IMG/VR virus record: IMGVR_UViG_3300034117_001582
Coordinates: 227,868-291,867 of that record
DNA length: 64,000 nt
Reading direction: 5' to 3' (one strand)
The notes below the pieces were generated by a model that saw nothing but the letters and a program-made list of their open reading frames with translations, had not been told where the DNA came from and did not search any database. A program made the position numbers and the translations under genes. Below are positions 8,237 to 63,724 of the stretch, one piece after another. Every line of letters begins with the position of its first letter. Within the stretch, counting starts at the first letter, position 1.

Positions 8237-9358
8237 TTATGCGTAGTTAACGTCTCTTGTTGTATCTATTTTTGCAAACTCCTGAGAGTAATCGTATATC
8301 TTATTTAAATCCACCTCTATATATGAATCATACTCATCTTTTACTGTTTTTGTTGCGGTATTAAAAAGTGTTTTAACGTCATGTGCGTCAGTATCATTAA
8401 TAAACAATTTAAAATTTAATAACGTAATATCTTCTGTACTTTTGAATGGTATCTTCATTAAATTATTCTCGTAAACCACATTAAAAACATTATCACCACT
8501 TTTAATCTTAACATTATCTTTTATTAATTTAATAAAATTATCTAATGTTCCAAAATCATCTACCCCTAAAAGTCTTTTTAAATTTTGAACTCTTGATGAA
8601 TTTTCAGTAGCAGAGTTACCGTAATCGGTATTAGTATTAACGGAAATTTGGGGGCCTTTAGCGTCTTCTGGTAAATAATCCACACCCTTACTGATAAAAT
8701 ACCCGCTAAGGCAGTGATTAAACTCGTGTACTAAAATTAACATAATAGAGTTTTTATTAACGTCACTTGGAAATACATTTTTAACACAAAAATTCAACTT
8801 AGAATATTCACCTTTAATAACAAACCCACCTGTAGAATCGTCACATGTCAAACTAAAAACTAAATTTACACTATTTAAAAAGTTTTTTAATTCATTTTTT
8901 TGTTTGTTATCCCATGCCGTTATCACGCCTTTTAATTTTACCTCCTCTTCTTTTACCATATCATTAAAAAACTCAAGGGTTTCTTTTGCTCTTTGTAATT
9001 CAGAAATATTGGCATTTTTTAACCCATTAACTTTGTTTTGCCAATTAATTACTTGTTTTTTATATTTTTCTAAATCTTCTGTATTGTATTTAGAACCTTT
9101 TCCTATTTTTTCTTGAACTTTTTTATTGAACCACTCGCTATCTATGTATTTTAACATGTAAGTTTTTGCTTCTGTAAAAAATGGTTTAACAAAATTTTCA
9201 ACCTCTGTTATTTTTTCTTGTTCGGTTTTGGCTTTGTCTTCCCAATAGGCTCGAAGGGTATTTAAATTAATGTTTTTTAATTTACAAGCATCATCCACTT
9301 CCTCTTTAATTACACCCATTATTGATTGTATTCTTCTTATGTTTTCGTGTAAATTCAT
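8237..9358 (-). CDS. Leader-B protein, putative zincin metalloprotease (HEFNH), paralog of 11853..12920
   Basis: MNLHENIRRIQSIMGVIKEE; ILVHEFNHC plus downstream E; TATTTAT 9363-9369. Confidence 0.85.
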   Translation of the reverse strand: MNLHENIRRIQSIMGVIKEEVDDACKLKNINLNTLRAYWEDKAKTEQEKITEVENFVKPFFTEAKTYMLKYIDSEWFNKKVQEKIGKGSKYNTEDLEKYKKQVINWQNKVNGLKNANISELQRAKETLEFFNDMVKEEEVKLKGVITAWDNKQKNELKNFLNSVNLVFSLTCDDSTGGFVIKGEYSKLNFCVKNVFPSDVNKNSIMLILVHEFNHCLSGYFISKGVDYLPEDAKGPQISVNTNTDYGNSATENSSRVQNLKRLLGVDDFGTLDNFIKLIKDNVKIKSGDNVFNVVYENNLMKIPFKSTEDITLLNFKLFINDTDAHDVKTLFNTATKTVKDEYDSYIEVDLNKIYDYSQEFAKIDTTRDVNYA

Positions 9359-9375
9359 ATTAATAAATATATCAT

Positions 9376-9412
9376 AAATAAAAATCCCCCCATCTTTACA
9401 AGTGGAGGATTA
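9376..9412 (-). terminator. Intrinsic terminator
   Basis: aatcc..ggatt imperfect hairpin + T-tract; related sequence at 14705-14730. Confidence 0.6.
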
Positions 9413-9418
9413 GTCATT

Positions 9419-10120
9419 TTATGGTACTTGTTGTAACCCTAACTCAAAGTAGTCATACTCGTTGTTGTAAAATCTTGGATTGTTTACAAATATATTATAC
9501 ATTGGAAGTAAAATGTTATGTAACTCTTCTTTCCATTCGTCGTAGTCAGTTTCTGTCATATCACTTATAAAATATTTAGGTTTTACTTTTTCTAATGTTC
9601 GTTCTAAATTGTCTTGAAGATTAGTTTTTCTTAGGTTTGTTATATTTCCATAAACATATACTTCTACTTCAGGGTCATTTGTTGTGACATGCGTGGTTTC
9701 ATAATCAAAGTCAAACTCATAACGATAAAACACCCCCGAAAAATCAATATGTTTAATTTGTTTTCCACTAACATTAAGATGTGTTCTATCTTCTTTTGAT
9801 ACATAACAATTGTTTCTGATATTTTTCATCCATGAAGCAAAATGCTTATATTTGTTAAAATCAGTGTTTGTCATATCACAAAATGATTTAAACTCATCAT
9901 GTAAAACTTGAGTTAGTATTGTTTTTGAATATGAATAATCATTTGGGTTTTTAACTTTCCATTTTATTTGTAACCCTGTCCATTTTGGAACTAAAAAAAG
10001 TCCTTCGAATTCTATTGGGTTTTCATTTAAATAATTATAATAGTAATACTTTACAGGATTTTCTTTAGGGTTGGTTCTTTCTTCCCTTAATACTCTTCTT
10101 ATGTTCTCTTGTAGGTTCAT
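9419..10120 (-). CDS. Leader-B protein (MNLQENIRRVLREE), unknown cargo
   Basis: Start reassigned to 10120 (4-nt overlap with upstream stop). Confidence 0.85.
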   Translation of the reverse strand: MNLQENIRRVLREERTNPKENPVKYYYYNYLNENPIEFEGLFLVPKWTGLQIKWKVKNPNDYSYSKTILTQVLHDEFKSFCDMTNTDFNKYKHFASWMKNIRNNCYVSKEDRTHLNVSGKQIKHIDFSGVFYRYEFDFDYETTHVTTNDPEVEVYVYGNITNLRKTNLQDNLERTLEKVKPKYFISDMTETDYDEWKEELHNILLPMYNIFVNNPRFYNNEYDYFELGLQQVP

Positions 10121-10848
10121 TCTGATAAATCTATAAACCAAGCAGATATTGGCACGTTTAGTTGGTTGGCGATGGTTGATCGTTTGTGTCCACCAATTAA
10201 TGTATATTCATTTCCTTCTCTTCCGCCTGTTGGTAATTTCATTACAAATGGTGCTGGAAGTTCTCTATGTTTTTCATTTCTTATTTTTTCTATATTATCA
10301 ACATAACCTTTGTGACGTTGTTTAACTTCTCCATCATCGCCTGTCATTTGTTTAATTAAACCTGATGATGTGGTATCTTTAAACATTCCTGGAAACTCTT
10401 TTGAGAATCTACCCATATAAAATGTGTTATTTATCATATCATTATCCCATTCTTCCATTCTTCCTTTATTAAACAAATTAAACCCTTCCATTTGTGATTG
10501 TCCATCTTTTAATAAAACTTGTCTAAAATCCTCCCAATCATCCATTAAATCAGATATTTCTTTATCTAATAGAATGTCTTTAATTTCTTGTTCATCATCC
10601 ACTTCACTTCCTTTTGAATGTTCGGCAATCATTTTGAATGTATGAGGAAATATGGAATACATTAAATCATAATTTTGTGGGTGAAAGAATTCATCTTTAC
10701 TGAACCTCATATTATTTCCCAATAGTTCATCTAACTCTTGGTTAAAGTATTCTACTGTTGGTTCTAACCAAGTGATAGAATATGGATTTGATATCTCATT
10801 TAACCCCATCATTGATTTAATTCTTTGTATGTTTTCTTGTAGGTTCAT
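10117..10848 (-). CDS. Leader-B protein with C-terminal ParB/Sulfiredoxin-like domain
   Basis: PAPFVM...YTLIGGHKRSTIANQLNVPI resembles ParBc P.V...Y.IIDGHHR..A...LG. Confidence 0.7.
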   Translation of the reverse strand: MNLQENIQRIKSMMGLNEISNPYSITWLEPTVEYFNQELDELLGNNMRFSKDEFFHPQNYDLMYSIFPHTFKMIAEHSKGSEVDDEQEIKDILLDKEISDLMDDWEDFRQVLLKDGQSQMEGFNLFNKGRMEEWDNDMINNTFYMGRFSKEFPGMFKDTTSSGLIKQMTGDDGEVKQRHKGYVDNIEKIRNEKHRELPAPFVMKLPTGGREGNEYTLIGGHKRSTIANQLNVPISAWFIDLSE

Positions 10849-10861
10849 ATTAATGAATATA

Positions 10862-11071
10862 TTATTTTTTGATAATTCTTATTCTTTTTTTTTCAATCCA
10901 ATTTTTTAATTCTTGAGTTTCTGGTACTTCAGTTAAAACAAACTCCCTAATATAATCATCGGCTAAAAAATTTGGTAAATTAACGGGTTGAAATCCCATT
11001 TCGTTTTTTGTGATTAAGACCAAATGATTTTTTTTTCTTTTGTGTCTTTTGGTGGGTATTAGTTTTTTCAT
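10862..11071 (-). CDS. Small basic hypothetical protein
   Basis: 69-aa ORF in operon order. Confidence 0.6.
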   Translation of the reverse strand: MKKLIPTKRHKRKKNHLVLITKNEMGFQPVNLPNFLADDYIREFVLTEVPETQELKNWIEKKRIRIIKK

Positions 11072-11111
11072 TTATGTTTTATTATTCTTTTTATATAACC
11101 TTGTAGGTTCA

Positions 11112-11429
11112 TTACTTTGTCTTCTTAACACAATTAGGATATCGTTTACCAAACATTGTCTTCATACCTTTTTGAGTATATCCTGCCCAACATCTCTCTG
11201 TAAGTTCACCTTCTTTCATCTCACTTTGTTTACGTTTACCTTGACAGTGAGCTCTTTGACTAAATCCTTTTGGGTTATTGCAGTCGATTGATTTTTTATA
11301 CTTTTCTGACCACTTTTCTGTAACATCCCCTTCTCCCATCTCTTCGTCATTTTTTATTGTATTTTCATTGATTACTCTTTTAACTAACAAAATAAGGTCT
11401 GATTCCGTTAACCGTATTACTTTTTTCAT
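11112..11429 (-). CDS. Leader-A protein carrying two short basic Cys-pair modules
   Basis: VTE|KWSEKYKKSIDCNNPKGFSQRAHC and LTE|RCWAGYTQKGMKTMFGKRYPNCVKK, modules I recall from large T4-like phage proteins. Confidence 0.85.
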   Translation of the reverse strand: MKKVIRLTESDLILLVKRVINENTIKNDEEMGEGDVTEKWSEKYKKSIDCNNPKGFSQRAHCQGKRKQSEMKEGELTERCWAGYTQKGMKTMFGKRYPNCVKKTK

Positions 11430-11430
11430 A

Positions 11431-11838
11431 TTATCTATTGTATGGCCTAAACCTTGATGGGTTTGATTTTATTGCTGACTTTGGGAATTTTAATCCAACA
11501 CCCTGTTGTCTTGCGTTCTTTAATGTTCTTGCGTATTCGGTTAGTTCTTCATTTCCCATATCATCAATAGCCTTTACTAATTTATGGCATTTCTCTGATA
11601 CCTCACCCTTTTCGTGATCAGTTATTGATAATTTTACTTTGTTGTAATTTATTTTAATATCAGGATGATGATTTTGTGATTCGGCAATCTTCGCAACTTT
11701 ATTAACAAATTCCATTGATTCATTAAAATCTTTGAATTTAAAAGTTCTTTCTAATTTTTGCTCTGAATCACTCCAACCTTTGGATTCATTCATATTTATC
11801 ATTTCCTGTATTCTTCTTATGTTCTCTTGTAGGTTCAT
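11431..11838 (-). CDS. phhB: Leader-B + pterin-4-alpha-carbinolamine dehydratase (PCD/DCoH) + basic C-terminal peptide
   Basis: LERTFKFKDF..SMEFVNKVAKIAESQNHHPDIKINYNKVKLSITDH is the Pterin_4a signature. Confidence 0.85.
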   Translation of the reverse strand: MNLQENIRRIQEMINMNESKGWSDSEQKLERTFKFKDFNESMEFVNKVAKIAESQNHHPDIKINYNKVKLSITDHEKGEVSEKCHKLVKAIDDMGNEELTEYARTLKNARQQGVGLKFPKSAIKSNPSRFRPYNR

Positions 11839-11852
11839 ATTATATGAATATA

Positions 11853-12920
11853 TTATGCGTAGTTAACATCATTATTTGTATTTATTTTTGCAAATTGTAT
11901 TGAGTAGTCATATATTTCTTTTAAATTGATTTTTAGTAAAGAAAGATTTAAATCTATCATATAATCTCCTACTGATATGGCATCTGATGCCGTCATTTCA
12001 TATTTTTTTCTATAAAAATCATATTTGTTTACCATTTCAGGATCTTCAGTGTATTCATTAAATAACCACCAAACGTCAATAGCGTCTACATTGTTAATAT
12101 TAATCCTAACGTCTATCCATTTCAATCGTTTATCGGATTTTTTATTGTTTTTACCATATATTTTTATTAAATTACCATCATATTCCACTTTATCAATAAC
12201 TACCTTATCGTCTTGCCCTGAAAACTTAACGTTATCTTTTATTAATTTAATAAAATTATCTAATGTTCCAAAATCGGTTACATTTAAAAGTCTTTTAAGT
12301 GTTTTAATACGAGCCGAATGTTCGTTATTTGATTTACCATAATCCTTATCCCATTCTTTAGGATAACGTTCCCCATACCATTTTGAATCAATATTGGATG
12401 GTAAATAGTTAGATACACCAATATTTTTAAAATAAAAAGAAATACAATGGTCAAATTCATGGACTAAAATTAATATACCCTCATTTTTATTAACACCATT
12501 AGGAAATATATTTTTAGTACAAAAATTAAGATTAGAATATTTGTCTTCATTAACAAACCCACCTACTTTGGGTTGACAGATTGGATCATCCGAATTAAAA
12601 ACTAAATTTACATTATTTATAAAGTCTTTTAATTCTTTTTTTTGTTTATCACCCCAATCTCCATTTGTGAACTCAATAAGTTTTTTATTGAACCATTCAC
12701 TGTCTACGTATTTTAACATGTAAGTTCTTGCTTGAGTAAAAAATGGTTTAACAAAATTTTCAACCTCTGTTATTTTTTCTTGTTCGGTTTTAGATTTGTC
12801 TTCCCAATATTTTTTTAAAGTAATAGGGTCAACATGTTTTAATTTACAAGCATCATCCACTTCCTCTTTAATTACCCCCATCATTTCCTGTATTCTTCTT
12901 ATGTTCTCTTGTAGGTTCAT
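11853..12920 (-). CDS. Leader-B protein, putative zincin metalloprotease (HEFDH)
   Basis: Paralog of 8237..9358; both end AKI.T..DVNYA; TATTTAT 12925-12931. Confidence 0.85.
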   Translation of the reverse strand: MNLQENIRRIQEMMGVIKEEVDDACKLKHVDPITLKKYWEDKSKTEQEKITEVENFVKPFFTQARTYMLKYVDSEWFNKKLIEFTNGDWGDKQKKELKDFINNVNLVFNSDDPICQPKVGGFVNEDKYSNLNFCTKNIFPNGVNKNEGILILVHEFDHCISFYFKNIGVSNYLPSNIDSKWYGERYPKEWDKDYGKSNNEHSARIKTLKRLLNVTDFGTLDNFIKLIKDNVKFSGQDDKVVIDKVEYDGNLIKIYGKNNKKSDKRLKWIDVRININNVDAIDVWWLFNEYTEDPEMVNKYDFYRKKYEMTASDAISVGDYMIDLNLSLLKINLKEIYDYSIQFAKINTNNDVNYA

Positions 12921-12935
12921 AATGATAAATACTTT

Positions 12936-13649
12936 TTACATATGAATTATTTTCCACTTACCTTTAAAATCCTCCACAAGACATGTGGAGTTCTCACAGA
13001 AGTCCCCACTGTTCATATAGTCCACATCTAACTTAGGTTGATGGATGTGTCCACATACCGCGACATCACATCCTTTTTGTTTTGATAATCCTTTTGCGTT
13101 CTCCTCAAAATCAGATACAAAGTTGATTGCTCCCTTTACAGATTGTTTAATATCATTTGCCAAGGAATGGTATGGTAAGTTAAACTTTCTTCTAATATAG
13201 TTGTATATCGTATTTAATCTAATAACTAAATCGTATGACCATCCACCAAGAACTGCCAACCATCTTACTTTCATAATCACAAAGTCTAATACATCCCCAT
13301 GAAAACAATAATAACTTCTTCCGTCCGCTCCAATGTGTGTGTATTTTCTAACAATCTCTATGTTGTTTAATAAGAACGGAACAAATGGTTTTAAAAAGTC
13401 ATCGTGGTTTCCCCTGATATACACTACCTTTGTTCCATCTTCTGATCGTTTCATAAAACGTCTGAATATCTTTGAGCAATCTTTTTTCCATTTACCTCCA
13501 CCCTTTAATGCCCATCCATCAATAATATCACCATTTAATATTAGTGTTTCAGATTCATTCTCTTCCAAGAACTTAATTATCTTGTCTGTTTGTGATTGTC
13601 TGGCACCTAAGTGTAAATCACTCATTATAATTGTTCTCCACTTTTTCAT
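12936..13649 (-). CDS. LpxH/PlcP-like metallophosphoesterase (UDP-2,3-diacylglucosamine hydrolase family)
   Basis: SDLHLG, LNGDIIDGW, GNHD, HGD, RWLAVLG..SY, CGHIH, YMNSGDFCENSTCLVE. Confidence 0.88.
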   Translation of the reverse strand: MKKWRTIIMSDLHLGARQSQTDKIIKFLEENESETLILNGDIIDGWALKGGGKWKKDCSKIFRRFMKRSEDGTKVVYIRGNHDDFLKPFVPFLLNNIEIVRKYTHIGADGRSYYCFHGDVLDFVIMKVRWLAVLGGWSYDLVIRLNTIYNYIRRKFNLPYHSLANDIKQSVKGAINFVSDFEENAKGLSKQKGCDVAVCGHIHQPKLDVDYMNSGDFCENSTCLVEDFKGKWKIIHM

Positions 13650-13972
13650 ATAAATAAAGATATGTATTGTGCTAATTTATAACCTGTAAATGCCCCAATG
13701 GCGGCAGATCCAGGAAGAATAATAAATTTACCCAATTTTGTTTTATACTTTTCACGATTTACAATGTATGAGATTAATAAATAATATAATATAAAATTTA
13801 TAAATACCATAAAATCAAGCTCCTTTGACATAAAAACAACAATTGAGTTACCAATAAGTCCCCACATAAAATTTATAATGGTTTCTCTTATTAACTCAAA
13901 TGGTGTTGTAATGGCCCCAAATATATTAATTTGTTTGCTCATGGGATTTTGTTTATTTTTTTTCATTTCCAA
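13646..13972 (-). CDS. Small multi-pass membrane protein
   Basis: Three hydrophobic segments; overlaps both neighbours. Confidence 0.7.
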   Translation of the reverse strand: MEMKKNKQNPMSKQINIFGAITTPFELIRETIINFMWGLIGNSIVVFMSKELDFMVFINFILYYLLISYIVNREKYKTKLGKFIILPGSAAIGAFTGYKLAQYISLFI

Positions 13973-14685
13973 TAGTCTTTGTCGTTTGTAAAATATTCTT
14001 TATTTTTATTATTGAAGAATGATGACAACATTAGTCTTAACATATACATCACACCTTTGTTTTCAAATCTTCTTGGTGGTGTATATACAATATTGTTTAT
14101 TCTTCCGAATTTCTTTGGTTTAATTTGTTTTGAGAACATATAATCTTCTGCGACTTTAATCTCTTCATCAAAACCTCCAATTGATTTAAACGTCTCTGAA
14201 CGAACTAACATGTATCCACCTAAACAGAATGGTGTTGACCACTTGGAAAGTGCTTGTATTAAGTCAAACACCTTATATACGTAGTTATATCTTCCATTGT
14301 CTGAACGGAACTTTGTTGTTACTAAATCTAAATGGTATCTATGTATTCTTACTACCGATCGTTTTAGTACCTTTGGATCTAATAGGAACACATCAGCATC
14401 CATAAACAACACATATGGTGTTGTAACAAGTTTGAATCCGTTGTTTCTTGCTATTGCTGGAAGTCCACCATCCATTAAATGTAAATCAAACATATCTGAA
14501 TTATGTTCATATTCTATTCTACCCAACAGGGCAAATTTTGTTACACCATCGTTTGATGCGTCACATACAACAACTTTTACGTTATGTATATCAACCTGAT
14601 AGTTTAACAGGTCCAACGTTTTTAATATAATATCCTTCTCGTTCTTACAAGGTATTACGATCGTTACTAATTTACTTAAATCCAT
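13963..14685 (-). CDS. Glycosyltransferase family 2
   Basis: TIVIPCKNE, VVVCDAS.DG, ARNNG, VLFMDAD (DxD), GGFDEEIKVAED. Confidence 0.92.
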   Translation of the reverse strand: MDLSKLVTIVIPCKNEKDIILKTLDLLNYQVDIHNVKVVVCDASNDGVTKFALLGRIEYEHNSDMFDLHLMDGGLPAIARNNGFKLVTTPYVLFMDADVFLLDPKVLKRSVVRIHRYHLDLVTTKFRSDNGRYNYVYKVFDLIQALSKWSTPFCLGGYMLVRSETFKSIGGFDEEIKVAEDYMFSKQIKPKKFGRINNIVYTPPRRFENKGVMYMLRLMLSSFFNNKNKEYFTNDKDYWK

Positions 14686-14763
14686 ATTCGTTTAATATAA
14701 TAATAATCCACCATATTTACAAGTGGAGAATAAAATTTATATTCAGCAATATCCAAATTTAAT

Positions 14764-15273
14764 TTATTTTTGACACCCAGGACTTTTGGGGTTCATTTTT
14801 TTACAATGGGTTCCTGTATAATAATCCCAACCTTTTTCAGAGTGACCAATTGATGTTTTTTCAAAAATATTTGGTTCAAAAAAAGTATTTAATTTATTAA
14901 TAATTTCATTATATACTTTTATAACTTCGCCATCCCATTTTTTATTTTTTTCAGCATCAAATTTTACACTTTCCATACTTGATTTAAAATAACCAACTAA
15001 ACCAACTAATTTAGGAACGTCATCAATAGTTTCACCTTCTTTTAAATTTTCATATTTTTCTTTATCGTAGTATTTACCATCAACTTTAACATAAAAATTT
15101 AACATACGTTCCACATTGTCTTTTAACTCTAAAATTGCGCTTATATGTGTTTTTTCATTATTATCACTTTTTAAGTTTAATTTATTTTTTATATATTCTA
15201 AACTGTTAGTGTTTTCCTCAGATAAGGTTATCATCATTGATTTAATCCTTTGTATGTTTTCTTGTAGGTTCAT
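14764..15273 (-). CDS. Leader-B protein, unknown cargo
   Basis: MNLQENIQRIKSMMITLSEE; first 45 nt incl. flank near-identical to gene 10117..10848. Confidence 0.85.
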   Translation of the reverse strand: MNLQENIQRIKSMMITLSEENTNSLEYIKNKLNLKSDNNEKTHISAILELKDNVERMLNFYVKVDGKYYDKEKYENLKEGETIDDVPKLVGLVGYFKSSMESVKFDAEKNKKWDGEVIKVYNEIINKLNTFFEPNIFEKTSIGHSEKGWDYYTGTHCKKMNPKSPGCQK

Positions 15274-15322
15274 ATTATATAATTATCTTTGTGTTCATTA
15301 ATGTTATATTTCATATCACTTA

Positions 15323-16393
15323 TTAATCCCAATCACCATTTTTTATTGTTTCCATCATCCAAGAAATGATTGATAATAACTCTTCATTAGTTAGGTTGTT
15401 AATAGTTGTTATGTATTGGTCGTTTTGTTCAGTATGTCCGTATTCATCAATATCAAATTCCATTATCTCAACAGCAATTTGGTCGCTGTCTTGAACCATT
15501 ATATCGTCAACATATTTGTTATTACTTAATTGTATTTCATATCCACTAAGTATTCCACTATTATCTCCCCATTTATTACCATTTATTAAAACAAAATCCC
15601 TAATATATTGTTTTAATACTTCTTTAGGGTTATTCATGTTTTTTAACGCCGAACTAATTTGACGAATGTCTAACCCTGACATGTTTATAAAATCATATAA
15701 ACCATACTCATCTATAAGTTCCGTTAAAGATTGTTTTTTATTTTCTGATTCATTCATGGGTTTCCATTTGCAATTTGGTTTTGATATGGATCCAACATAT
15801 AAATTATCTATTGGCAAATAACCTTTAATAGCGTTTTTAACATCATTTCTTAAATTTTCTCCATGTCGCGCTCTTCCAACAAAACTAAAAAATAAATCAT
15901 TTAGTTCTTCCGACCCAAACACCAAATAAATCACATACATATCGTCTTCGAATGTTACTCTAATATCGCAAACACAATCTTCTTTTTTGAATGGTTCTAT
16001 AAGTTCTTTAATTATGTTAAGATACTTTGGTTGTTTTTCTTCGGATTCATTTATAACGTTTCCTTCACTATCGTATTTTAGTTTAATGGCATCCAAACGA
16101 AAATCTGCACTGTTATCTTGGTCATTGTGCCAATATGGAATAAGTTTAATACCTGTATATTCATAGATTTTACGTTGTATTTGTTCTGCAAAATAAGTCT
16201 CTTCATTACCAGCATATTCATCGTTATCAAAATAAACTCTTATCATTGGTTTATTTTCATATTTTTTAATATCAATAAAACTAACCTCATCAAAAAACTC
16301 ATGAATCATTCTTGTCACCAACTTAAGTTTTTTCTCTTCAGATTTGTCAACTGATTCCCTTAATATTTTTTTTATGGATTCTTGTAGGGTCAT
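15323..16393 (-). CDS. Leader-B three-module polyprotein-like protein
   Basis: ILRE|S, VINE|S, PMNE|S partition three modules. Confidence 0.85.
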   Translation of the reverse strand: MTLQESIKKILRESVDKSEEKKLKLVTRMIHEFFDEVSFIDIKKYENKPMIRVYFDNDEYAGNEETYFAEQIQRKIYEYTGIKLIPYWHNDQDNSADFRLDAIKLKYDSEGNVINESEEKQPKYLNIIKELIEPFKKEDCVCDIRVTFEDDMYVIYLVFGSEELNDLFFSFVGRARHGENLRNDVKNAIKGYLPIDNLYVGSISKPNCKWKPMNESENKKQSLTELIDEYGLYDFINMSGLDIRQISSALKNMNNPKEVLKQYIRDFVLINGNKWGDNSGILSGYEIQLSNNKYVDDIMVQDSDQIAVEIMEFDIDEYGHTEQNDQYITTINNLTNEELLSIISWMMETIKNGDWD

Positions 16394-16845
16394 ATAAAAA
16401 TTATATTAGTGGCTTTACAACCAAACTTTTCATTTATTAACTCTAATAACTCAATTTTCCAATTACCTTTACGTCCCAAGTAGTTCTCAATTTCTTCAGC
16501 AAACTGTTCGTAAAATATTATAAAATTAAAATTTGGATTTTTAACATCAGGCATTTCATAACATACTTCAGGTAACTCACCCATTACTTCTTTAAAGTAT
16601 TTACCATTATCGTCATAGTTATTACCATCAACCAATTTGAATAAATAATCATCATAATTATTTTTTGGAAGAACAAACCCAACAGCATATGGGTCACAAC
16701 AAACACCCATTCCACAATTATATTGAGCCCAATCATAATAGATATCATCAAATCCATCAAACAACATATTAAGTAAATTGCTTAAAACGGGTTTAATATT
16801 GGTTTCTTCCCTTAATATTTTTCTTATGGATTCTTGTTGGTTCAT
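16390..16845 (-). CDS. Leader-B protein (MNQQESIRKILREE)
   Basis: ORF track; Cys-rich cargo. Confidence 0.85.
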   Translation of the reverse strand: MNQQESIRKILREETNIKPVLSNLLNMLFDGFDDIYYDWAQYNCGMGVCCDPYAVGFVLPKNNYDDYLFKLVDGNNYDDNGKYFKEVMGELPEVCYEMPDVKNPNFNFIIFYEQFAEEIENYLGRKGNWKIELLELINEKFGCKATNIIFI

Positions 16846-18441
16846 CTATATATTATTTTTAACCATATTATAAAAGAACTCACTGATTTTATCAGGAGTT
16901 GTTATGTTCTGTTGTTTTAATTGTGACCGATAAAACCCTACCATCGCAATTATTTGTGACATAGGCGCGTTTTTATATAATGATGGAGGAATAAACCCTT
17001 TATCTAATAATCCTTGTTTTTGGAGTTGTTTAATCTTTTTTCCCGCAAACTCATCCGCAACTTCTTCAGTATGTTTCATTAGGTTTGCTGCCTCCTCAAC
17101 ACTTATATCACCAAGATAACACTCATACATTAAATCTTCACCATATTTTTTAAATTGGTACTGATGTGCAGTCTCGTGAAATATAATAAACAATAGATAT
17201 TCTAACCTTTGGTTTAACGCCATTTTATTTATTAACACACCATCATGTAAAGCAACTCCCATAGCCGGCATCTTGAAATTGGCAAATTCTATTTTTTTGC
17301 AGTTTGATTGTGAAATAAAATCTTTTACCTTTTCTATTAACTCATCAGACATTTCATGTCTTGATGTAATATCATCTATTAAGGTGTTAACACCATCAGT
17401 TTCTTCCTTTAATACTTTTCTTATGGATTCTTTTAGGTATATGTTTTTCTTTCCACAATCGTTAACTGTTTTGTAATACGTATCAACCGCCTCGTTTGTG
17501 TAATTATAAATTACCTGCCAAATCTCATCCAATATGTTATCATACATTTGTTTAATCCCTTGAGTTTGTGGAAAAAGTTTTGTTCCATGTCCACCAATAA
17601 ATGTTACGGTAACACTTACAAATTTAAATGTATTATTACCCAAAGTATTTCTTTCATTAGGTACCTTAACTTCAAACCCACATATTACGTGGTCATATTC
17701 AGGTAGTATTATATTATTTAATACATTCTCAATCATTTCTTTTTGTGACTCTTCTTTGGATTCTCTTATCATATCTCTGCCAGTACCTTCACGCATTAAT
17801 TCTATTGCTTCTGATGGTATGTTATCAAACGTAACTATATGTTTCTTAGATGATTCAAAATGTCTATCTTTATACCACTTAACATTAGGTATTAATTCTG
17901 TATTGATTGTCCATACATCGTCGTCATATGTAGAATCAAACCACGCTCGTTTATTTGTCGAGTTGGTTGCAAATATTGCAGGTATACATTTTTCACCATA
18001 TCCTGCGTATATTTTATAACATTCACCAGCAATTGCCTTTAACCCTTCATTTGATATTCTATCTCTAAACTTTGGATTGGATTTATGTATAACAATTTTG
18101 TTTGGTGTAATTTCTTTTCCTGCTGGGCTATAATTTTCATTAAGTTCTTCCTCATATCTTTCAGTATCTAAATAAAAATCAGGTTCCTTTTTTAATTCTG
18201 TTCGTTTCTTGTAGTCATACCAAGGAACAACATTTAAACCGGTAAACTTATTTATAGTATCACATATTTCTGAACTCTCTAACTCTTCCCATGCATCATA
18301 GTAAACCATAATCTCATTTCTTTTGGCGATGTATTCTAAATCTATAATATTATCAAACATGGTATATATAAAATTCTTAACTAACTCAAATTTATTAGTC
18401 TCCTCTTTTAATACTTTTTTTATGTTCTTTTTTATGTTCAT
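16846..18441 (-). CDS. Four-module polyprotein-like protein: unknown + ART/Tpt1-like + unknown + IrrE/ImmA-like HExxH peptidase
   Basis: VLKE|, ELNE|, MIRE|, embedded YLKESIRKVLKEE; HETAH...EEVADEFA. Confidence 0.8.
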   Translation of the reverse strand: MNIKKNIKKVLKEETNKFELVKNFIYTMFDNIIDLEYIAKRNEIMVYYDAWEELESSEICDTINKFTGLNVVPWYDYKKRTELKKEPDFYLDTERYEEELNENYSPAGKEITPNKIVIHKSNPKFRDRISNEGLKAIAGECYKIYAGYGEKCIPAIFATNSTNKRAWFDSTYDDDVWTINTELIPNVKWYKDRHFESSKKHIVTFDNIPSEAIELMREGTGRDMIRESKEESQKEMIENVLNNIILPEYDHVICGFEVKVPNERNTLGNNTFKFVSVTVTFIGGHGTKLFPQTQGIKQMYDNILDEIWQVIYNYTNEAVDTYYKTVNDCGKKNIYLKESIRKVLKEETDGVNTLIDDITSRHEMSDELIEKVKDFISQSNCKKIEFANFKMPAMGVALHDGVLINKMALNQRLEYLLFIIFHETAHQYQFKKYGEDLMYECYLGDISVEEAANLMKHTEEVADEFAGKKIKQLQKQGLLDKGFIPPSLYKNAPMSQIIAMVGFYRSQLKQQNITTPDKISEFFYNMVKNNI

Positions 18442-18442
18442 G

Positions 18443-18766
18443 TTACATTACTTGGGATAAAAACTTTTTAATTGTTCTAACCACTTTTTGTCTATATGGA
18501 TTGTTTTCATTTGAAAAATTATCAATTGGTTCTGTAACGTTATTATCTTCTAACATATTCAATATCAATCTTACTTGTCTTTTTTTATTATCAAAAGTTC
18601 CAATATTATAATAATCGTCATCTACTTTGAAATAAACTTTTTTAAATCTAATCTGGTCATCAATATTTATTTCTTCAACTTTATATCTTCGCATAAGAAA
18701 ATTCATAACTTTTTTGTCAATGTCCTCAGTTTCTTCTTTCAATATGTGTCTAATTAGTTTTCTCAT
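18443..18766 (-). CDS. Leader-C protein (MRKLIRHILKEE)
   Basis: ORF track. Confidence 0.85.
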   Translation of the reverse strand: MRKLIRHILKEETEDIDKKVMNFLMRRYKVEEINIDDQIRFKKVYFKVDDDYYNIGTFDNKKRQVRLILNMLEDNNVTEPIDNFSNENNPYRQKVVRTIKKFLSQVM

Positions 18767-41892: not shown

Positions 41893-43011
41893 TTAATGGG
41901 AGTCACCTACGTTATGTTTTTCACTAAATATGCTATAGTCAGGATTAATTACTTTACCTACTTTGTGTCTATCACCAGTAACAGATTTAACAACTACACC
42001 TTCGTGAGGAACTTTGGTTCCCTCTATATTATTATTAAATACGTATTTATCTTGTTTTTCTTTGCACCAAGTCCCCAAATAAAGAACCTCAACTCTTTGT
42101 AACCCCAAAGATTTGAAGACATTCTTTTCATCGTAATAAGGTCTGTAATTACCATTTAATTCAACATCAAAACCAGCAAATTTAACATCAGTTAAACCAT
42201 AATCATAATTTTTTTGTATACCATGACCATATATCTCACCATAGATGATTAACCCATCACCCAAATAGTCAGGACGACTATATGTCTTAACATAATCCCA
42301 TAGTTTATCTTTTATTTTGTAATTATCTGCGACAGTTCTCCAAACATCGGTTTCATAAAAACCTTGAGAGTCAGAACCTTTCTCTACATTGTGAGACCCG
42401 TAAACATATTCATACCCAGCCCATTTGTTTCCAAAGAACTTTTTAACATAGTCCCAAAAAGATAATCTTTTCTTTTTAACAATACCATAACGAGCATTTG
42501 TTCCGTGAAGTTTACGAGTGATAGTAACTATGTCTTCCTCGTTAAACATTTCAGGTGCGTTCTTCAAGTTAGGAAACTTGTAGTAGATATGGAAGTTAGG
42601 GTTTTGGTGGTACTTAAATTTTCTACCCCCACTTAACTGAACCATCTTAACAGGTGGTTCGTATTTGAACACTTCAAGTAACTCCATGCAGTCAGAACCA
42701 TCGTATCTGTATTCCTCAGGAACAAAACTTATTGGTATTATTAAACATTCAGAATAAACCTTACGAAGTTTTATAGTTCTTACTCTCTGACCCTTACGAA
42801 GATAACTTGTAACACCTAATTCATCAGAAAGTTTTTGTGGTATAACCGCATCGGTAGTTGCAACAACAACTAAATCACCTTCTGTATATTCACCTTTTTT
42901 AGTTATAGCGTTCCAACCATTAACGATTGCAAGCTCTATGTTGTCAGCACCTTCTATTGTCTTAACCTCTCCGATTGCACCAACATAACATACACTATTT
43001 AAATTTTCCAT
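41893..43011 (-). CDS. ATP-dependent RNA ligase, DRB0094 family
   Basis: N-terminal OB-like (EGADNIEL..V.GW, RVRTIKLR..YSE), motif I TRKLHGTN, IYGEIYG, FAGFDV, HEGVVVK. Confidence 0.88.
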   Translation of the reverse strand: MENLNSVCYVGAIGEVKTIEGADNIELAIVNGWNAITKKGEYTEGDLVVVATTDAVIPQKLSDELGVTSYLRKGQRVRTIKLRKVYSECLIIPISFVPEEYRYDGSDCMELLEVFKYEPPVKMVQLSGGRKFKYHQNPNFHIYYKFPNLKNAPEMFNEEDIVTITRKLHGTNARYGIVKKKRLSFWDYVKKFFGNKWAGYEYVYGSHNVEKGSDSQGFYETDVWRTVADNYKIKDKLWDYVKTYSRPDYLGDGLIIYGEIYGHGIQKNYDYGLTDVKFAGFDVELNGNYRPYYDEKNVFKSLGLQRVEVLYLGTWCKEKQDKYVFNNNIEGTKVPHEGVVVKSVTGDRHKVGKVINPDYSIFSEKHNVGDSH

Positions 43012-62572: not shown

Positions 62573-63724
62573 TTAATTTGATAATGGTGCCTTTATTGGT
62601 GGATGTGATTGATAATCTTTTAATGTAAAATCACCAACAACATACGATTCAATACTTGGTCTTGTTCCTGTGTAAGTTGGGAACTGATTTAGTGTTGGTA
62701 ATTCAAATGGTTCTCTTGTATGTGTTGGTGTAGTTTTTTTATATAATTCTTCTGTTATTAAAACATTATCCATTTCAAGACCAGTATTTTTTATTACCCA
62801 TTGAATTTTTTCTTCCCATGTCATTTGTCTACCAATCTGTTCTTTTGCTTGTTCAATGTGATTTAAATATAAATGTGTATCACCCAAATTACCAATCAAT
62901 TCATCAGGAACCATATTAACTTCTTTTGATAAGATTTCAAGTAGTAGTCCATAAGAAGCAATATTGAATGGGATTCCCAAAAATAAATCCGCAGATCTTT
63001 GGTTCCACATTAAAGAGATTGATCTGGTTGGAATGTTTGCTTCATCTAAATCTTTATTGGTAATCTTTTCTAAAAATCTTTCAACTTTCTTACCTTGCAT
63101 AAACAAATTTACTCTTTCACTTATACTCAACTCTCTTGTATAAACTTGAAATCCATAATGACAAGGTGGAAGAACCATTTGATCCAATTCACCCACATTC
63201 CAAGCATTAACCATTAATCGTCTTGAGTCTGGGTTTGTTTTGAGGTCGTTGATTAGGTTTTGGATTTGGTCTATTTGATAAGTATCAATAGTTTTTTCAC
63301 CTTTGTATTGTTGAAATTTAGTCCAATTACGCCATTGCTTACCGTAGATTTGCCCCATATCAAACATTGAATCGTGAAAAGAATGATTACCATCTTTTAC
63401 TTTCTGTTTAACCTCTTCTATTGTATATGGTTCTGAACAAGTAGTTTTGTAATTTTTTTCCCAATCACCGTCCCATATTTTACAATTATTTTCCCATAAA
63501 AACCTAATATCTGAATCACCACGAAGGAACCACAATAATTCTGTTGTAATTGTTTTGAATGACATTTTCTTTGTTGTAAGTAATGGGAATCCCTCACTCA
63601 TTTTATGACGGATCTGTCTACCAAACACTGAAAGAGTCCCAGTACCAGTACGATCCGATTTTGTAACTCCATTTTCAAGAATGTCCTGTAATAAATCTGT
63701 GTATTGTTTATCTAAGTTATTCAT
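62573..63724 (-). CDS. thyA: Thymidylate synthase
   Basis: DRTGTGT, FPLLTTKK, ELLWFLRG, SRR, LPPCH, NQRSADLFLGIPFNIASY, GDTHLY.NH. Confidence 0.97.
   Translation of the reverse strand: MNNLDKQYTDLLQDILENGVTKSDRTGTGTLSVFGRQIRHKMSEGFPLLTTKKMSFKTITTELLWFLRGDSDIRFLWENNCKIWDGDWEKNYKTTCSEPYTIEEVKQKVKDGNHSFHDSMFDMGQIYGKQWRNWTKFQQYKGEKTIDTYQIDQIQNLINDLKTNPDSRRLMVNAWNVGELDQMVLPPCHYGFQVYTRELSISERVNLFMQGKKVERFLEKITNKDLDEANIPTRSISLMWNQRSADLFLGIPFNIASYGLLLEILSKEVNMVPDELIGNLGDTHLYLNHIEQAKEQIGRQMTWEEKIQWVIKNTGLEMDNVLITEELYKKTTPTHTREPFELPTLNQFPTYTGTRPSIESYVVGDFTLKDYQSHPPIKAPLSN

What the first reader, a model, noticed from the sequence alone, without database searches (positions are those of the whole stretch)
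12936..14685. PlcP-like phosphoesterase + membrane protein + GT2: candidate phage lipid-remodelling / phosphate-release module
Seen: three overlapping genes. The phosphoesterase has the features I associate with the PlcP subgroup of LpxH-annotated proteins (GDIIDGW, RWLAVLG..SY, N..RR..N.PY.SL, K..VK.A.NF..DFE, N.GD..E..T.LVE). Established: PlcP with a glycosyltransferase replaces phospholipids with glycolipids under P limitation in Sinorhizobium, SAR11 and other aquatic bacteria. Inference: an auxiliary module freeing phosphate for phage DNA synthesis and/or altering the envelope. An LpxH-type lipid A role cannot be excluded by eye.
Basis: partly seen in the sequence, partly recalled or inferred. 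Interest (0 to 1): 0.65.

Follow-up and report, generated by a model that had tools for sequence, protein, structure and literature searches.

The report
Phage phospholipase C plus glycosyltransferase module
A 292-kb lake phage carries a gene pair that most likely cuts the phosphate headgroup off host membrane phospholipids and caps the leftover lipid with a sugar, a phosphorus-saving pathway so far described only in bacteria and labelled in viromes as the lipid A gene lpxH.

Summary
The three overlapping minus-strand genes are real and under purifying selection.

**Phosphoesterase (12936-13649).** It is a PlcP-family enzyme, not LpxH.
- It is 38% identical over its full length to Sinorhizobium meliloti PlcP and 41% to Pseudomonas aeruginosa PA3219. 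It is 23% identical to E. coli LpxH.
- It scores far below both LpxH equivalog cut-offs.
- It lies on the PlcP side of a 100/100-supported split in the tree.

**Glycosyltransferase pairing.** The link is strongly conserved.
- Of the 80 best IMG/VR loci with a PlcP-like gene (at least 596 exist), 66 have this GT2 family directly adjacent, in either gene order.
- Six have the canonical Agt-type GT4 instead, and eight have none.
- Five of the 150 nearest 50%-identity cluster representatives are GT4-PlcP fusion proteins.
- Bacteroidales orthologues overlap a GT-B glycosyltransferase.

**Small membrane protein (108 aa).** It is a real gene but an accessory insertion. It is missing from most relatives and also occurs elsewhere.

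**Best reading.** This is a phage-borne phospholipid-to-glycolipid remodelling pair in which a GT2 replaces Agt. That it supplies phosphorus for phage DNA synthesis is inference. No enzyme activity, host or regulation is shown.

The kind is known in bacteria. I found no report of it on phages. Novelty: a new variant of a known kind.

The parts
13963..14685 (-). GT2-family (GT-A fold) glycosyltransferase, 240 aa, no transmembrane segment; proposed diacylglycerol glycosyltransferase standing in for Agt
   Evidence: Pfam PF00535 E 8e-14 and PF13506 (GT21) 25.5 bits. DAD (96-98) and ED (180-181) are invariant in 23 homologues. AF2 model pLDDT 84.7 with a GT-A fold and C-terminal helices 205-233. 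PDB matches are generic GT2: PcManGT TMq 0.72, TarS, TarP, GtrB, ArnC. The family lies next to a PlcP-like gene in 66 of 80 viral loci.
13646..13972 (-). Small hydrophobic membrane protein, 108 aa (106 aa from ATG at 13966); accessory insertion between GT2 and PlcP
   Evidence: No Pfam, NCBIfam or PHROG hit. Hydrophobic segments. dN/dS 0.06-0.24 against 5 homologues. 19 IMG/VR homologues: 8 lie between a GT2 and a PlcP-like gene, 11 elsewhere, one checked example following an NDP-sugar epimerase/dehydratase. Absent in L004-L008 and L037. Contigs in runs X21 and X24 skip exactly 13641-13959.
12936..13649 (-). PlcP-family metallophosphoesterase, 237 aa; proposed Mn-dependent phospholipase C releasing diacylglycerol and a phospho-headgroup
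   Evidence: 38%/202 bits to S. meliloti PlcP, 41%/192 bits to PA3219, 23%/31 bits to E. coli LpxH. LpxH models score 38.9 against a cut-off of 134 and 27 against 190. Motifs DLH, GDIID, GNHD, HGD, GHIH, GDF. On the PlcP side of a 100/100 split. AF2 pLDDT 90 with a helical cap at 118-191; the top 25 PDB hits are all LpxH at TMq 0.51-0.60.
14695..14731 (-). 37-nt repeated element (imperfect hairpin followed by a T-rich run) between the upstream 169-aa gene and the GT2 start; possible terminator or regulatory site marking the start of the module's transcription unit
   Evidence: Direct repeat D8, with its only other genome copy at 9374-9410 upstream of ORF 8237-9358. It overlaps a promoter-like match at 14722-14694, which is not above chance. 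Function not tested.

Best explanation
This is a phage-carried version of the bacterial PlcP-glycosyltransferase lipid-remodelling pathway. Step 1, shown by homology only: the 237-aa protein is a PlcP-type binuclear metallophosphoesterase with an LpxH-like helical lipid-binding cap. It acts as a phospholipase C on host glycerophospholipids, giving diacylglycerol plus a phospho-headgroup. Step 2, inferred from conserved gene linkage: the translationally coupled GT2 transfers a sugar from a nucleotide sugar to that diacylglycerol. The bilayer is thereby kept intact with a phosphorus-free glycolipid, so the GT2 is a non-homologous replacement of Agt (GT4). Step 3, inference: host phosphatases turn the released headgroup into phosphate. 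This helps a 292-kb phage replicate in phosphorus-poor lake water. The 108-aa membrane protein is an optional add-on of unknown role.
For: PlcP identity. The S. meliloti reference is 46.6% identical to PA3219, matching the 46% published for the characterised enzymes (PMC8528852). S. meliloti PlcP's 206 bits would rank about 9th among the query's nearest 50%-identity cluster representatives. Catalytic residues are invariant across 90 homologues and present in the query. Linkage to a glycosyltransferase: 72 of 80 viral loci have one adjacent. Of these, 51 have the GT2 upstream, 15 have it downstream, and 6 have an Agt1-like GT4 (228-317 bits) in the bacterial plcP-agt order. The cassette is kept at 48% (PlcP) and 36% (GT2) identity. 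There are five GT4-PlcP fusion proteins. Bacteroidales orthologues overlap a GT-B/GT28-like gene, and the same genomes hold a separate, better LpxH. Phosphorus context: lake water, in runs from at least 17 studies. pstS lies beside the homologue in Pelagibacter phage Mosig and PPK2 beside it in close relatives. PhoH is in this genome. Contigs from four metatranscriptome libraries cover both genes.
Against: No activity, lipid change, host or regulation is shown. The GT2 has no characterised close relative. Its fold matches are generic and include polyprenyl-phosphate and teichoic-acid glycosyltransferases, and Bacteroidota hold only weak homologues. The GNHD histidine is not decisive, because Bacteroidales LpxH-type paralogues also have it. 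An AU test did not quite reject the phage clade being the deepest branch next to the LpxH branch (p 0.0585). This genome has no pstS, PPK2 or sugar nucleotidyltransferase. RNA-library contigs cannot prove transcription. Some IMG/VR loci, especially the Agt-type ones, could be misbinned bacterial DNA.
Confidence: 0.6

Rival explanations
1. The phosphoesterase is a true LpxH (UDP-2,3-diacylglucosamine diphosphatase) that boosts or alters host lipid A synthesis, as database annotations and virome surveys assume.
For: Sources name it LpxH. The best NCBIfam hit is an LpxH model. The nearest solved structures are all LpxH. Virome papers list viral lpxH under LPS biosynthesis.
Against: Scores are 38.9 against a cut-off of 134 and 27 against 190. 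It is 23% identical to E. coli LpxH against 38-41% to PlcPs. phmmer gave five of the six proteobacterial LpxH references and all four Bacteroidales LpxH-type references no hit at E 1e-3; Neisseria gave only a 21.7-bit partial match. LpxH is a separate 100/100 clade. Block signatures match PlcP (GDI[IV]DGW, CGHIH, Y.N.GD..E), not LpxH. Bacteroidales with orthologues have a separate, better LpxH. No PlcP structure exists in the PDB, so the fold match only shows the shared superfamily architecture.
Confidence: 0.03
2. The chemistry is the same (phospholipid to glycolipid), but the benefit is envelope alteration rather than phosphorus supply. Candidates are blocking superinfection, changing receptor display, or stabilising the membrane during a long jumbo-phage infection.
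For: The module sits inside a hypervariable locus of tagged, possibly injected, proteins. This genome lacks pstS and PPK2. The literature shows lipid remodelling changes phage attachment and grazing (titles).
Against: The pathway is Pho-regulated and phosphorus-sparing wherever it has been studied. Homologues in other phages lie beside pstS or PPK2. Lakes are classically phosphorus-limited (general knowledge).
Confidence: 0.2
3. The GT2, together with the small membrane protein, is a Gtr-like or polyprenyl-phosphate glycosylation system for surface glycans. The phosphoesterase acts on a polyprenyl or nucleotide-sugar diphosphate rather than on phospholipid.
For: There is a PHROG hit to GtrB-like O-antigen conversion (E 5.5e-4). 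Fold matches include GtrB, ArnC and PcManGT. The small protein also follows an NDP-sugar epimerase in other phages. The genome has a separate glycan cluster.
Against: The GT2 has no transmembrane helices, whereas GtrB and ArnC have two. The small protein has no GtrA hit and is missing from most modules. Agt-type DAG glycosyltransferases substitute for the GT2 in 6 viral loci and in the fusions. The phosphoesterase is a close PlcP relative.
Confidence: 0.1
4. The substrate is another phosphodiester lipid of the unknown host, for example a phosphosphingolipid of a Bacteroidota host, giving ceramide that the GT2 glycosylates.
For: The nearest bacterial orthologues are in Bacteroidales and Opitutales. 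144 of 401 Bacteroidota species genomes carry a homologue. The capsid protein is nearest to those of Flavobacterium phages.
Against: No host is identified. All characterised family members act on glycerophospholipids. There is no direct evidence.
Confidence: 0.07

Closest known systems
PlcP-Agt lipid remodelling pathway (S. meliloti SMc00171; P. aeruginosa PA3219/PA3218; SAR11 HTCC7211; Phaeobacter MED193; Methylosinus OB3b)
   Same: The phosphoesterase is 38-41% identical over its full length, with the same motif blocks and cap region. The gene is directly coupled to a glycosyltransferase. The characterised PlcPs are themselves only 46-47% identical to each other.
   Different: It is carried by a phage. 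The partner is a 240-aa GT-A fold GT2, not the GT-B fold GT4 Agt. The gene order is usually GT first. No Pho box or host is known. GDW is GDF in this protein. An extra membrane-protein gene is inserted in this lineage.
LpxH (UDP-2,3-diacylglucosamine diphosphatase of lipid A synthesis)
   Same: It shares the calcineurin-like core with a helical lipid-binding cap, and LpxH gives the nearest solved structures. It shares the metal-binding motifs.
   Different: Identity is 23%, scores are far below the family cut-offs, and it is a separate clade. It has GNHD, not the GNRD of proteobacterial LpxH.
Phage phosphate-stress auxiliary genes (pstS, phoA, phoH of cyanophages and pelagiphages)
   Same: The proposed benefit is the same: easing phosphorus limitation of phage replication. 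The homologue in pelagiphage Mosig lies beside pstS, and this genome has phoH.
   Different: Those genes import or scavenge external phosphate. This module would mine the host's own membrane.
GtrABC-type phage serotype-conversion glycosylation
   Same: Both are phage-borne GT2 genes beside a small membrane protein, and there is a weak PHROG hit.
   Different: There are no transmembrane helices in the GT2, no GtrA signature and no GtrC. The small protein is optional.

Membership tests
PlcP (metallophosphoesterase-type phospholipase C) | Six conserved motifs DXH, GDXXD, GNHD, HGD, GHIH, GDW (PMC9239053, legend of Fig. S5, which prints the second motif as GDXXH) | tested here: met
   DLH, GDIID, GNHD, HGD and GHIH are present; the last motif is GDF instead of GDW. 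Metal ligands are invariant in 90 homologues.
PlcP (metallophosphoesterase-type phospholipase C) | Histidine in the third motif, required for phospholipase activity and replaced in LpxH | tested here: met
   H82 is present. The proteobacterial LpxH references have Arg. Caveat: the Bacteroidales LpxH-type paralogues also have His, so this alone is weak.
PlcP (metallophosphoesterase-type phospholipase C) | Closer in sequence to characterised PlcPs than to LpxH | tested here: met
   202 and 192 bits (38%, 41%) against 31 bits (23%). phmmer gave 206 and 192 bits for the PlcPs. It gave no hit at E 1e-3 to nine of the ten LpxH-type references and a 21.7-bit partial match to Neisseria.
PlcP (metallophosphoesterase-type phospholipase C) | Falls with characterised PlcPs in a tree with LpxH as outgroup | tested here: met
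   The LpxH split has 99 SH-aLRT support (106 rows) and 100/100 (39 rows). The query is nested well inside the PlcP side. An AU test of phage clade plus LpxH held on one side of a branch gave p 0.0585, which is not a formal rejection.
PlcP (metallophosphoesterase-type phospholipase C) | Gene next to a diacylglycerol glycosyltransferase gene | tested here: inconclusive
   A glycosyltransferase is adjacent here and in 72 of 80 viral loci. Here it is a GT2 whose acceptor is unknown. Only 6 viral loci have the proven Agt type.
PlcP (metallophosphoesterase-type phospholipase C) | Induced by phosphate starvation (Pho box) and Mn-dependent hydrolysis of PE/PG/PC to diacylglycerol | not testable with these tools
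   The host is unknown, so no Pho box model applies. The promoter scan was at chance level.
LpxH | Reaches the curated equivalog scores (NF003743 134 bits; TIGR01854 190 bits) | tested here: not met
   38.9 and 27 bits.
LpxH | Groups with lipid A LpxH enzymes; is the only LpxH-type gene of its carrier | tested here: not met
   It is in a separate clade. Bacterial genomes with orthologues carry a distinct, better-scoring LpxH.
Agt (GT4 diacylglycerol glycosyltransferase) | GT-B fold with GT4 donor-binding motifs | tested here: not met
   The partner is a GT-A fold GT2. It can only be a functional analogue, not a member.
GtrB / ArnC / DPMS polyprenyl-phosphate GT2 | GT-A domain followed by C-terminal transmembrane helices | tested here: not met
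   No segment reaches the hydropathy threshold. The protein is 240 aa. The PHROG match is weak (E 5.5e-4).
GtrA-like flippase (for the 108-aa protein) | Match to the GtrA family profile; four transmembrane helices | tested here: not met
   No Pfam hit at E 0.01. Two clear hydrophobic segments and one weaker one.

The most novel reading that the evidence does not exclude
Aquatic phages widely carry their own two-enzyme phospholipid-to-glycolipid conversion pathway, built around PlcP and a previously unrecognised GT2 class of diacylglycerol glycosyltransferase. The viral 'lpxH' genes counted in virome surveys as LPS biosynthesis would then be membrane phosphorus-mining genes, so infection itself would drive lipid remodelling in phosphorus-poor waters.
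Probability: 0.45. Interest if true: 0.75.

Novelty: new variant of a known kind. Interest (0 to 1): 0.62.

Why it matters
Phosphorus limits both bacteria and the phages that replicate in them, and membrane phospholipid is a large cellular phosphorus store.

If phages encode the remodelling pathway themselves, three things follow:
- A new class of phosphorus-related auxiliary gene joins pstS, phoA and phoH.
- Viral 'lpxH' counts in virome studies are being filed under the wrong process.
- A compact GT2 becomes a candidate new type of glycolipid synthase.

The family is abundant. There are at least 596 IMG/VR stretches. One 90% cluster has 1750 member sequences. Near-identical DNA occurs in lake-water runs from at least 17 studies. 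The claim is cheaply testable by expressing two small genes in E. coli and running lipidomics, as was done for P. aeruginosa Agt1 and Agt2.

Tried and rejected
- **Complex prediction of GT2 with PlcP.** No answer (score 0.01). This counts neither for nor against binding.
- **phmmer of the phosphoesterase against PDB sequences.** No hit. Only the fold search found LpxH.
- **Megablast of the region against cultured phages.** No match.
- **Promoter and terminator scan.** Counts were at chance level, so no operon boundaries are claimed from it.
- **GT2 against 401 Bacteroidota genomes.** Only generic hits of 41 bits or less, so no donor or bacterial orthologue was found.
- **GT2 fold search and Atlas look-alikes.** Generic GT2 matches. 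The leads (PcManGT, a CrtQ-like lipid GT2, clusters hitting GT21) are too weak to assign an acceptor.
- **AU test.** p 0.0585, not decisive. The constraint is also met by simply placing the phage clade at the base of the PlcP side.
- **Wei et al. 2018, key PlcP residues.** The paper is not held. I relied on the legend quoted in PMC9239053.
- **Mosig genome announcement.** It does not discuss the gene.
- **Methylobacterium reference (L034).** Dropped, because my ORF picker took a wrong frame in that high-GC DNA.
- **Host identification.** Not achieved. The capsid protein and the PlcP tree only hint at Bacteroidota.
- **Practical notes.** No other genetic code was used. Read laying was given 3.6 kb.

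Full report
**Setting.** The window is the last 64 kb of a single 291,867-bp virus record. Its GC content is 31.8%, and CheckV rates it 99% complete.
- Genes are packed on the minus strand. Few of them match phage families.
- The genome has a T4-type gp23 capsid protein, a gp21-like prohead protease and PhoH.
- The capsid protein is nearest to those of uncultured huge phages, Microcystis phage Mel-JY01 and Flavobacterium phages, at 41-47% identity over about 40% of its length.
- Near-identical DNA occurs in lake-water metagenome runs from at least 17 studies.
- The host is unknown.

**Observation.** The three ORFs are exactly as described.
- Both junctions are ATGA stop/start overlaps.
- Pfam finds Metallophos, nothing, and GT2 respectively.
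- Each gene shows far fewer non-synonymous than synonymous changes against relatives. All three are therefore real coding genes.

**PlcP or LpxH.** The LpxH equivalog models score 38.9 against a cut-off of 134 and 27 against 190.

I obtained named reference sequences from chromosomes that are filed as plasmids in PLSDB:
- S. meliloti PlcP. It is the only hit in that 3.7-Mb record, and it is 46.6% identical to the P. aeruginosa protein. That matches the 46% published for the two characterised enzymes.
- P. aeruginosa PA3219, followed by its Agt1 glycosyltransferase and cyaB.
- E. coli LpxH and five other proteobacterial LpxH sequences.
- Four Bacteroidales LpxH-type proteins.

The comparisons gave these results:
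- The phage protein aligns end to end with S. meliloti PlcP (38%, 202 bits) and PA3219 (41%, 192 bits). With E. coli LpxH it aligns only weakly (23%, 31 bits).
- In a phmmer run, nine of the ten LpxH-type references gave no hit at E 1e-3. Neisseria gave a 21.7-bit partial match.
- S. meliloti PlcP's 206 bits would rank about ninth among the query's nearest relatives in a library of 1.84 billion cluster representatives.
- In trees, LpxH is split off with 99 (106 rows) and 100/100 (39 rows) support. The phage clade is nested on the PlcP side, in a well-supported set with Bacteroidales and Opitutales proteins and the GT4-PlcP fusions.
- The published diagnostic is a histidine in the GNHD motif, which PlcP needs and LpxH has replaced. 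The query has it. However, the Bacteroidales LpxH-type paralogues also keep the histidine, so it is weak on its own. The other blocks (GDI[IV]DGW, CGHIH, Y.N.GD..E) follow PlcP throughout.
- An AU test that held the phage clade and LpxH on one side of a branch cost 13.7 log-likelihood units, p 0.0585. That constraint is also met by placing the phage clade at the base of the PlcP side, so the test says little about LpxH identity. I report it as not decisive.
- The AF2 model (pLDDT 90) has the calcineurin-like core plus a helical cap at residues 118-191. Its top 25 PDB matches are all LpxH at TMq 0.51-0.60. No PlcP structure is in the PDB, so this shows shared architecture and not identity.

**Link to glycosyltransferases.** This is the strongest functional evidence.
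- Close relatives (82-95% identity) in contigs up to about 300 kb have the GT2 overlapping the phosphoesterase.
- A relative with 48% (PlcP) and 36% (GT2) identity keeps the same cassette.
- At least 596 IMG/VR stretches encode a PlcP-like protein. Of the 80 best loci (41-95% identity):
  - 51 have a GT2 of this family just upstream.
  - 15 have it just downstream.
  - 6 have an Agt1-like GT4 (228-317 bits) in the bacterial plcP-agt order.
  - 8 have neither, two of them with cut flanks.
- Adjacency survives changes of gene order and of glycosyltransferase fold. That is what a two-step pathway predicts.
- Five of the 150 nearest cluster representatives are single proteins with an N-terminal GT4 domain and a C-terminal PlcP domain.
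- In Prevotellaceae, Paraprevotella and Parabacteroides, the orthologue overlaps a GT-B gene (PF13528, with GT28 C-terminal hits). The same genomes have a separate, better LpxH.
- The literature records plcP beside either agt or a UgtP-type DAG glycosyltransferase.

**The GT2.** It is a 240-aa GT-A enzyme.
- DAD and ED motifs are invariant, and there are C-terminal helices but no transmembrane segment.
- Family and fold searches give only generic GT2 matches.
- Bacteroidota hold only weak homologues.
- Its acceptor is therefore inferred from context, not from homology.

**The small gene.** It is under purifying selection, but it is optional.
- It is absent in L004-L008 and L037. Contigs in two runs join 13641 to 13959 and skip it exactly.
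- In IMG/VR it lies between a GT2 and a PlcP-like gene in 8 loci, in 7 of them a PlcP-like gene only 34-36% identical to this one. It lies after PlcP in 1 locus and elsewhere in 11.
- In the one such locus I checked, it follows an NDP-sugar epimerase/dehydratase.
- It may be a membrane partner of sugar-handling enzymes. I cannot say more.

**Phosphorus context.**
- The Mosig pelagiphage homologue (38.8%) sits beside pstS.
- Close relatives have PPK2 next to the module.
- This genome has PhoH but no pstS or PPK2.
- Contigs from four lake or sediment metatranscriptome libraries cover both enzyme genes. They do not cover the flanking genes, apart from a repeated tag sequence. This fits expression, but DNA carry-over and the higher conservation of these two genes could also explain it.

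**Comparison and novelty.**
- The pathway is well known in bacteria.
- In the held literature I found no report of a phage-encoded PlcP.
- Virome papers list viral lpxH under LPS biosynthesis.
- I therefore file the phosphoesterase as a new member of the PlcP family. I file the module as a new variant of the PlcP-glycosyltransferase system: it is phage-borne and has a GT2 partner.

**Confidence.**
- About 0.85 that the enzyme is PlcP-type.
- About 0.6 that the GT2 glycosylates its product.
- About 0.5 that the selective benefit is phosphorus supply.

Noticed in passing
window 9300-18450, minus strand (gene starts at 10141, 10848, 11838, 12920, 15273, 16393, 16845, 18441; one more in the genome at 225893): About ten otherwise unrelated genes begin with the same N-terminal tag (MNLQENIRRI... 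or M.LQESIKKILRE), and the coding DNA is a direct repeat. One tagged gene is a pterin-4a-carbinolamine dehydratase domain (11431-11838). The genome has a T4 gp21-like prohead protease, and the tags contain L/I-x-E sites. They may therefore be capsid-targeting sequences like those of T4 internal proteins, marking a hypervariable locus of packaged proteins. The PlcP module sits inside this locus without a tag.
   Followed up: partly
window 11842 joined to 15232: One contig from an RNA library joins these two tag sequences and skips 3,389 bases: the 355-aa gene, the whole module and the 169-aa gene. This suggests tag-to-tag recombination moves gene blocks in and out.
   Followed up: no
window 14695-14731 and 9374-9410: A 37-nt element (imperfect hairpin plus T-rich run) occurs only twice in the genome: upstream of the GT2 and upstream of ORF 8237-9358.
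   Followed up: partly
genome 129-143 kb (outside the window): A second glycan-related cluster holds three more GT2 genes and an NDP-sugar epimerase/dehydratase (138423-139145) next to PhoH (139945-140550).
   Followed up: no
L011 and L013 (Prevotellaceae, Paraprevotella): Two PlcP-like paralogues flank one GT-B glycosyltransferase. A histidine phosphatase gene lies just upstream in L011. Gut Bacteroidales may therefore have an unstudied PlcP-type lipid pathway.
   Followed up: partly
L040-L046 (IMG/VR): The same GT2 (72-75% identity) and small gene (75%) are followed by a phosphoesterase only 34-36% identical to the window's. The PlcP partner appears to have been swapped within the cassette.
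   Followed up: no
PLSDB records CP090106.1, NZ_CP115947.1 and others: Several whole chromosomes or chromosome fragments are filed as plasmids. This was useful here as a source of named references, but it is a trap for plasmid statistics.
   Followed up: no
window 41893-43011 and 62573-63724: RNA ligase and thymidylate synthase genes. Eight of the ten largest ORFs in the window have no PHROG match at all.
   Followed up: no
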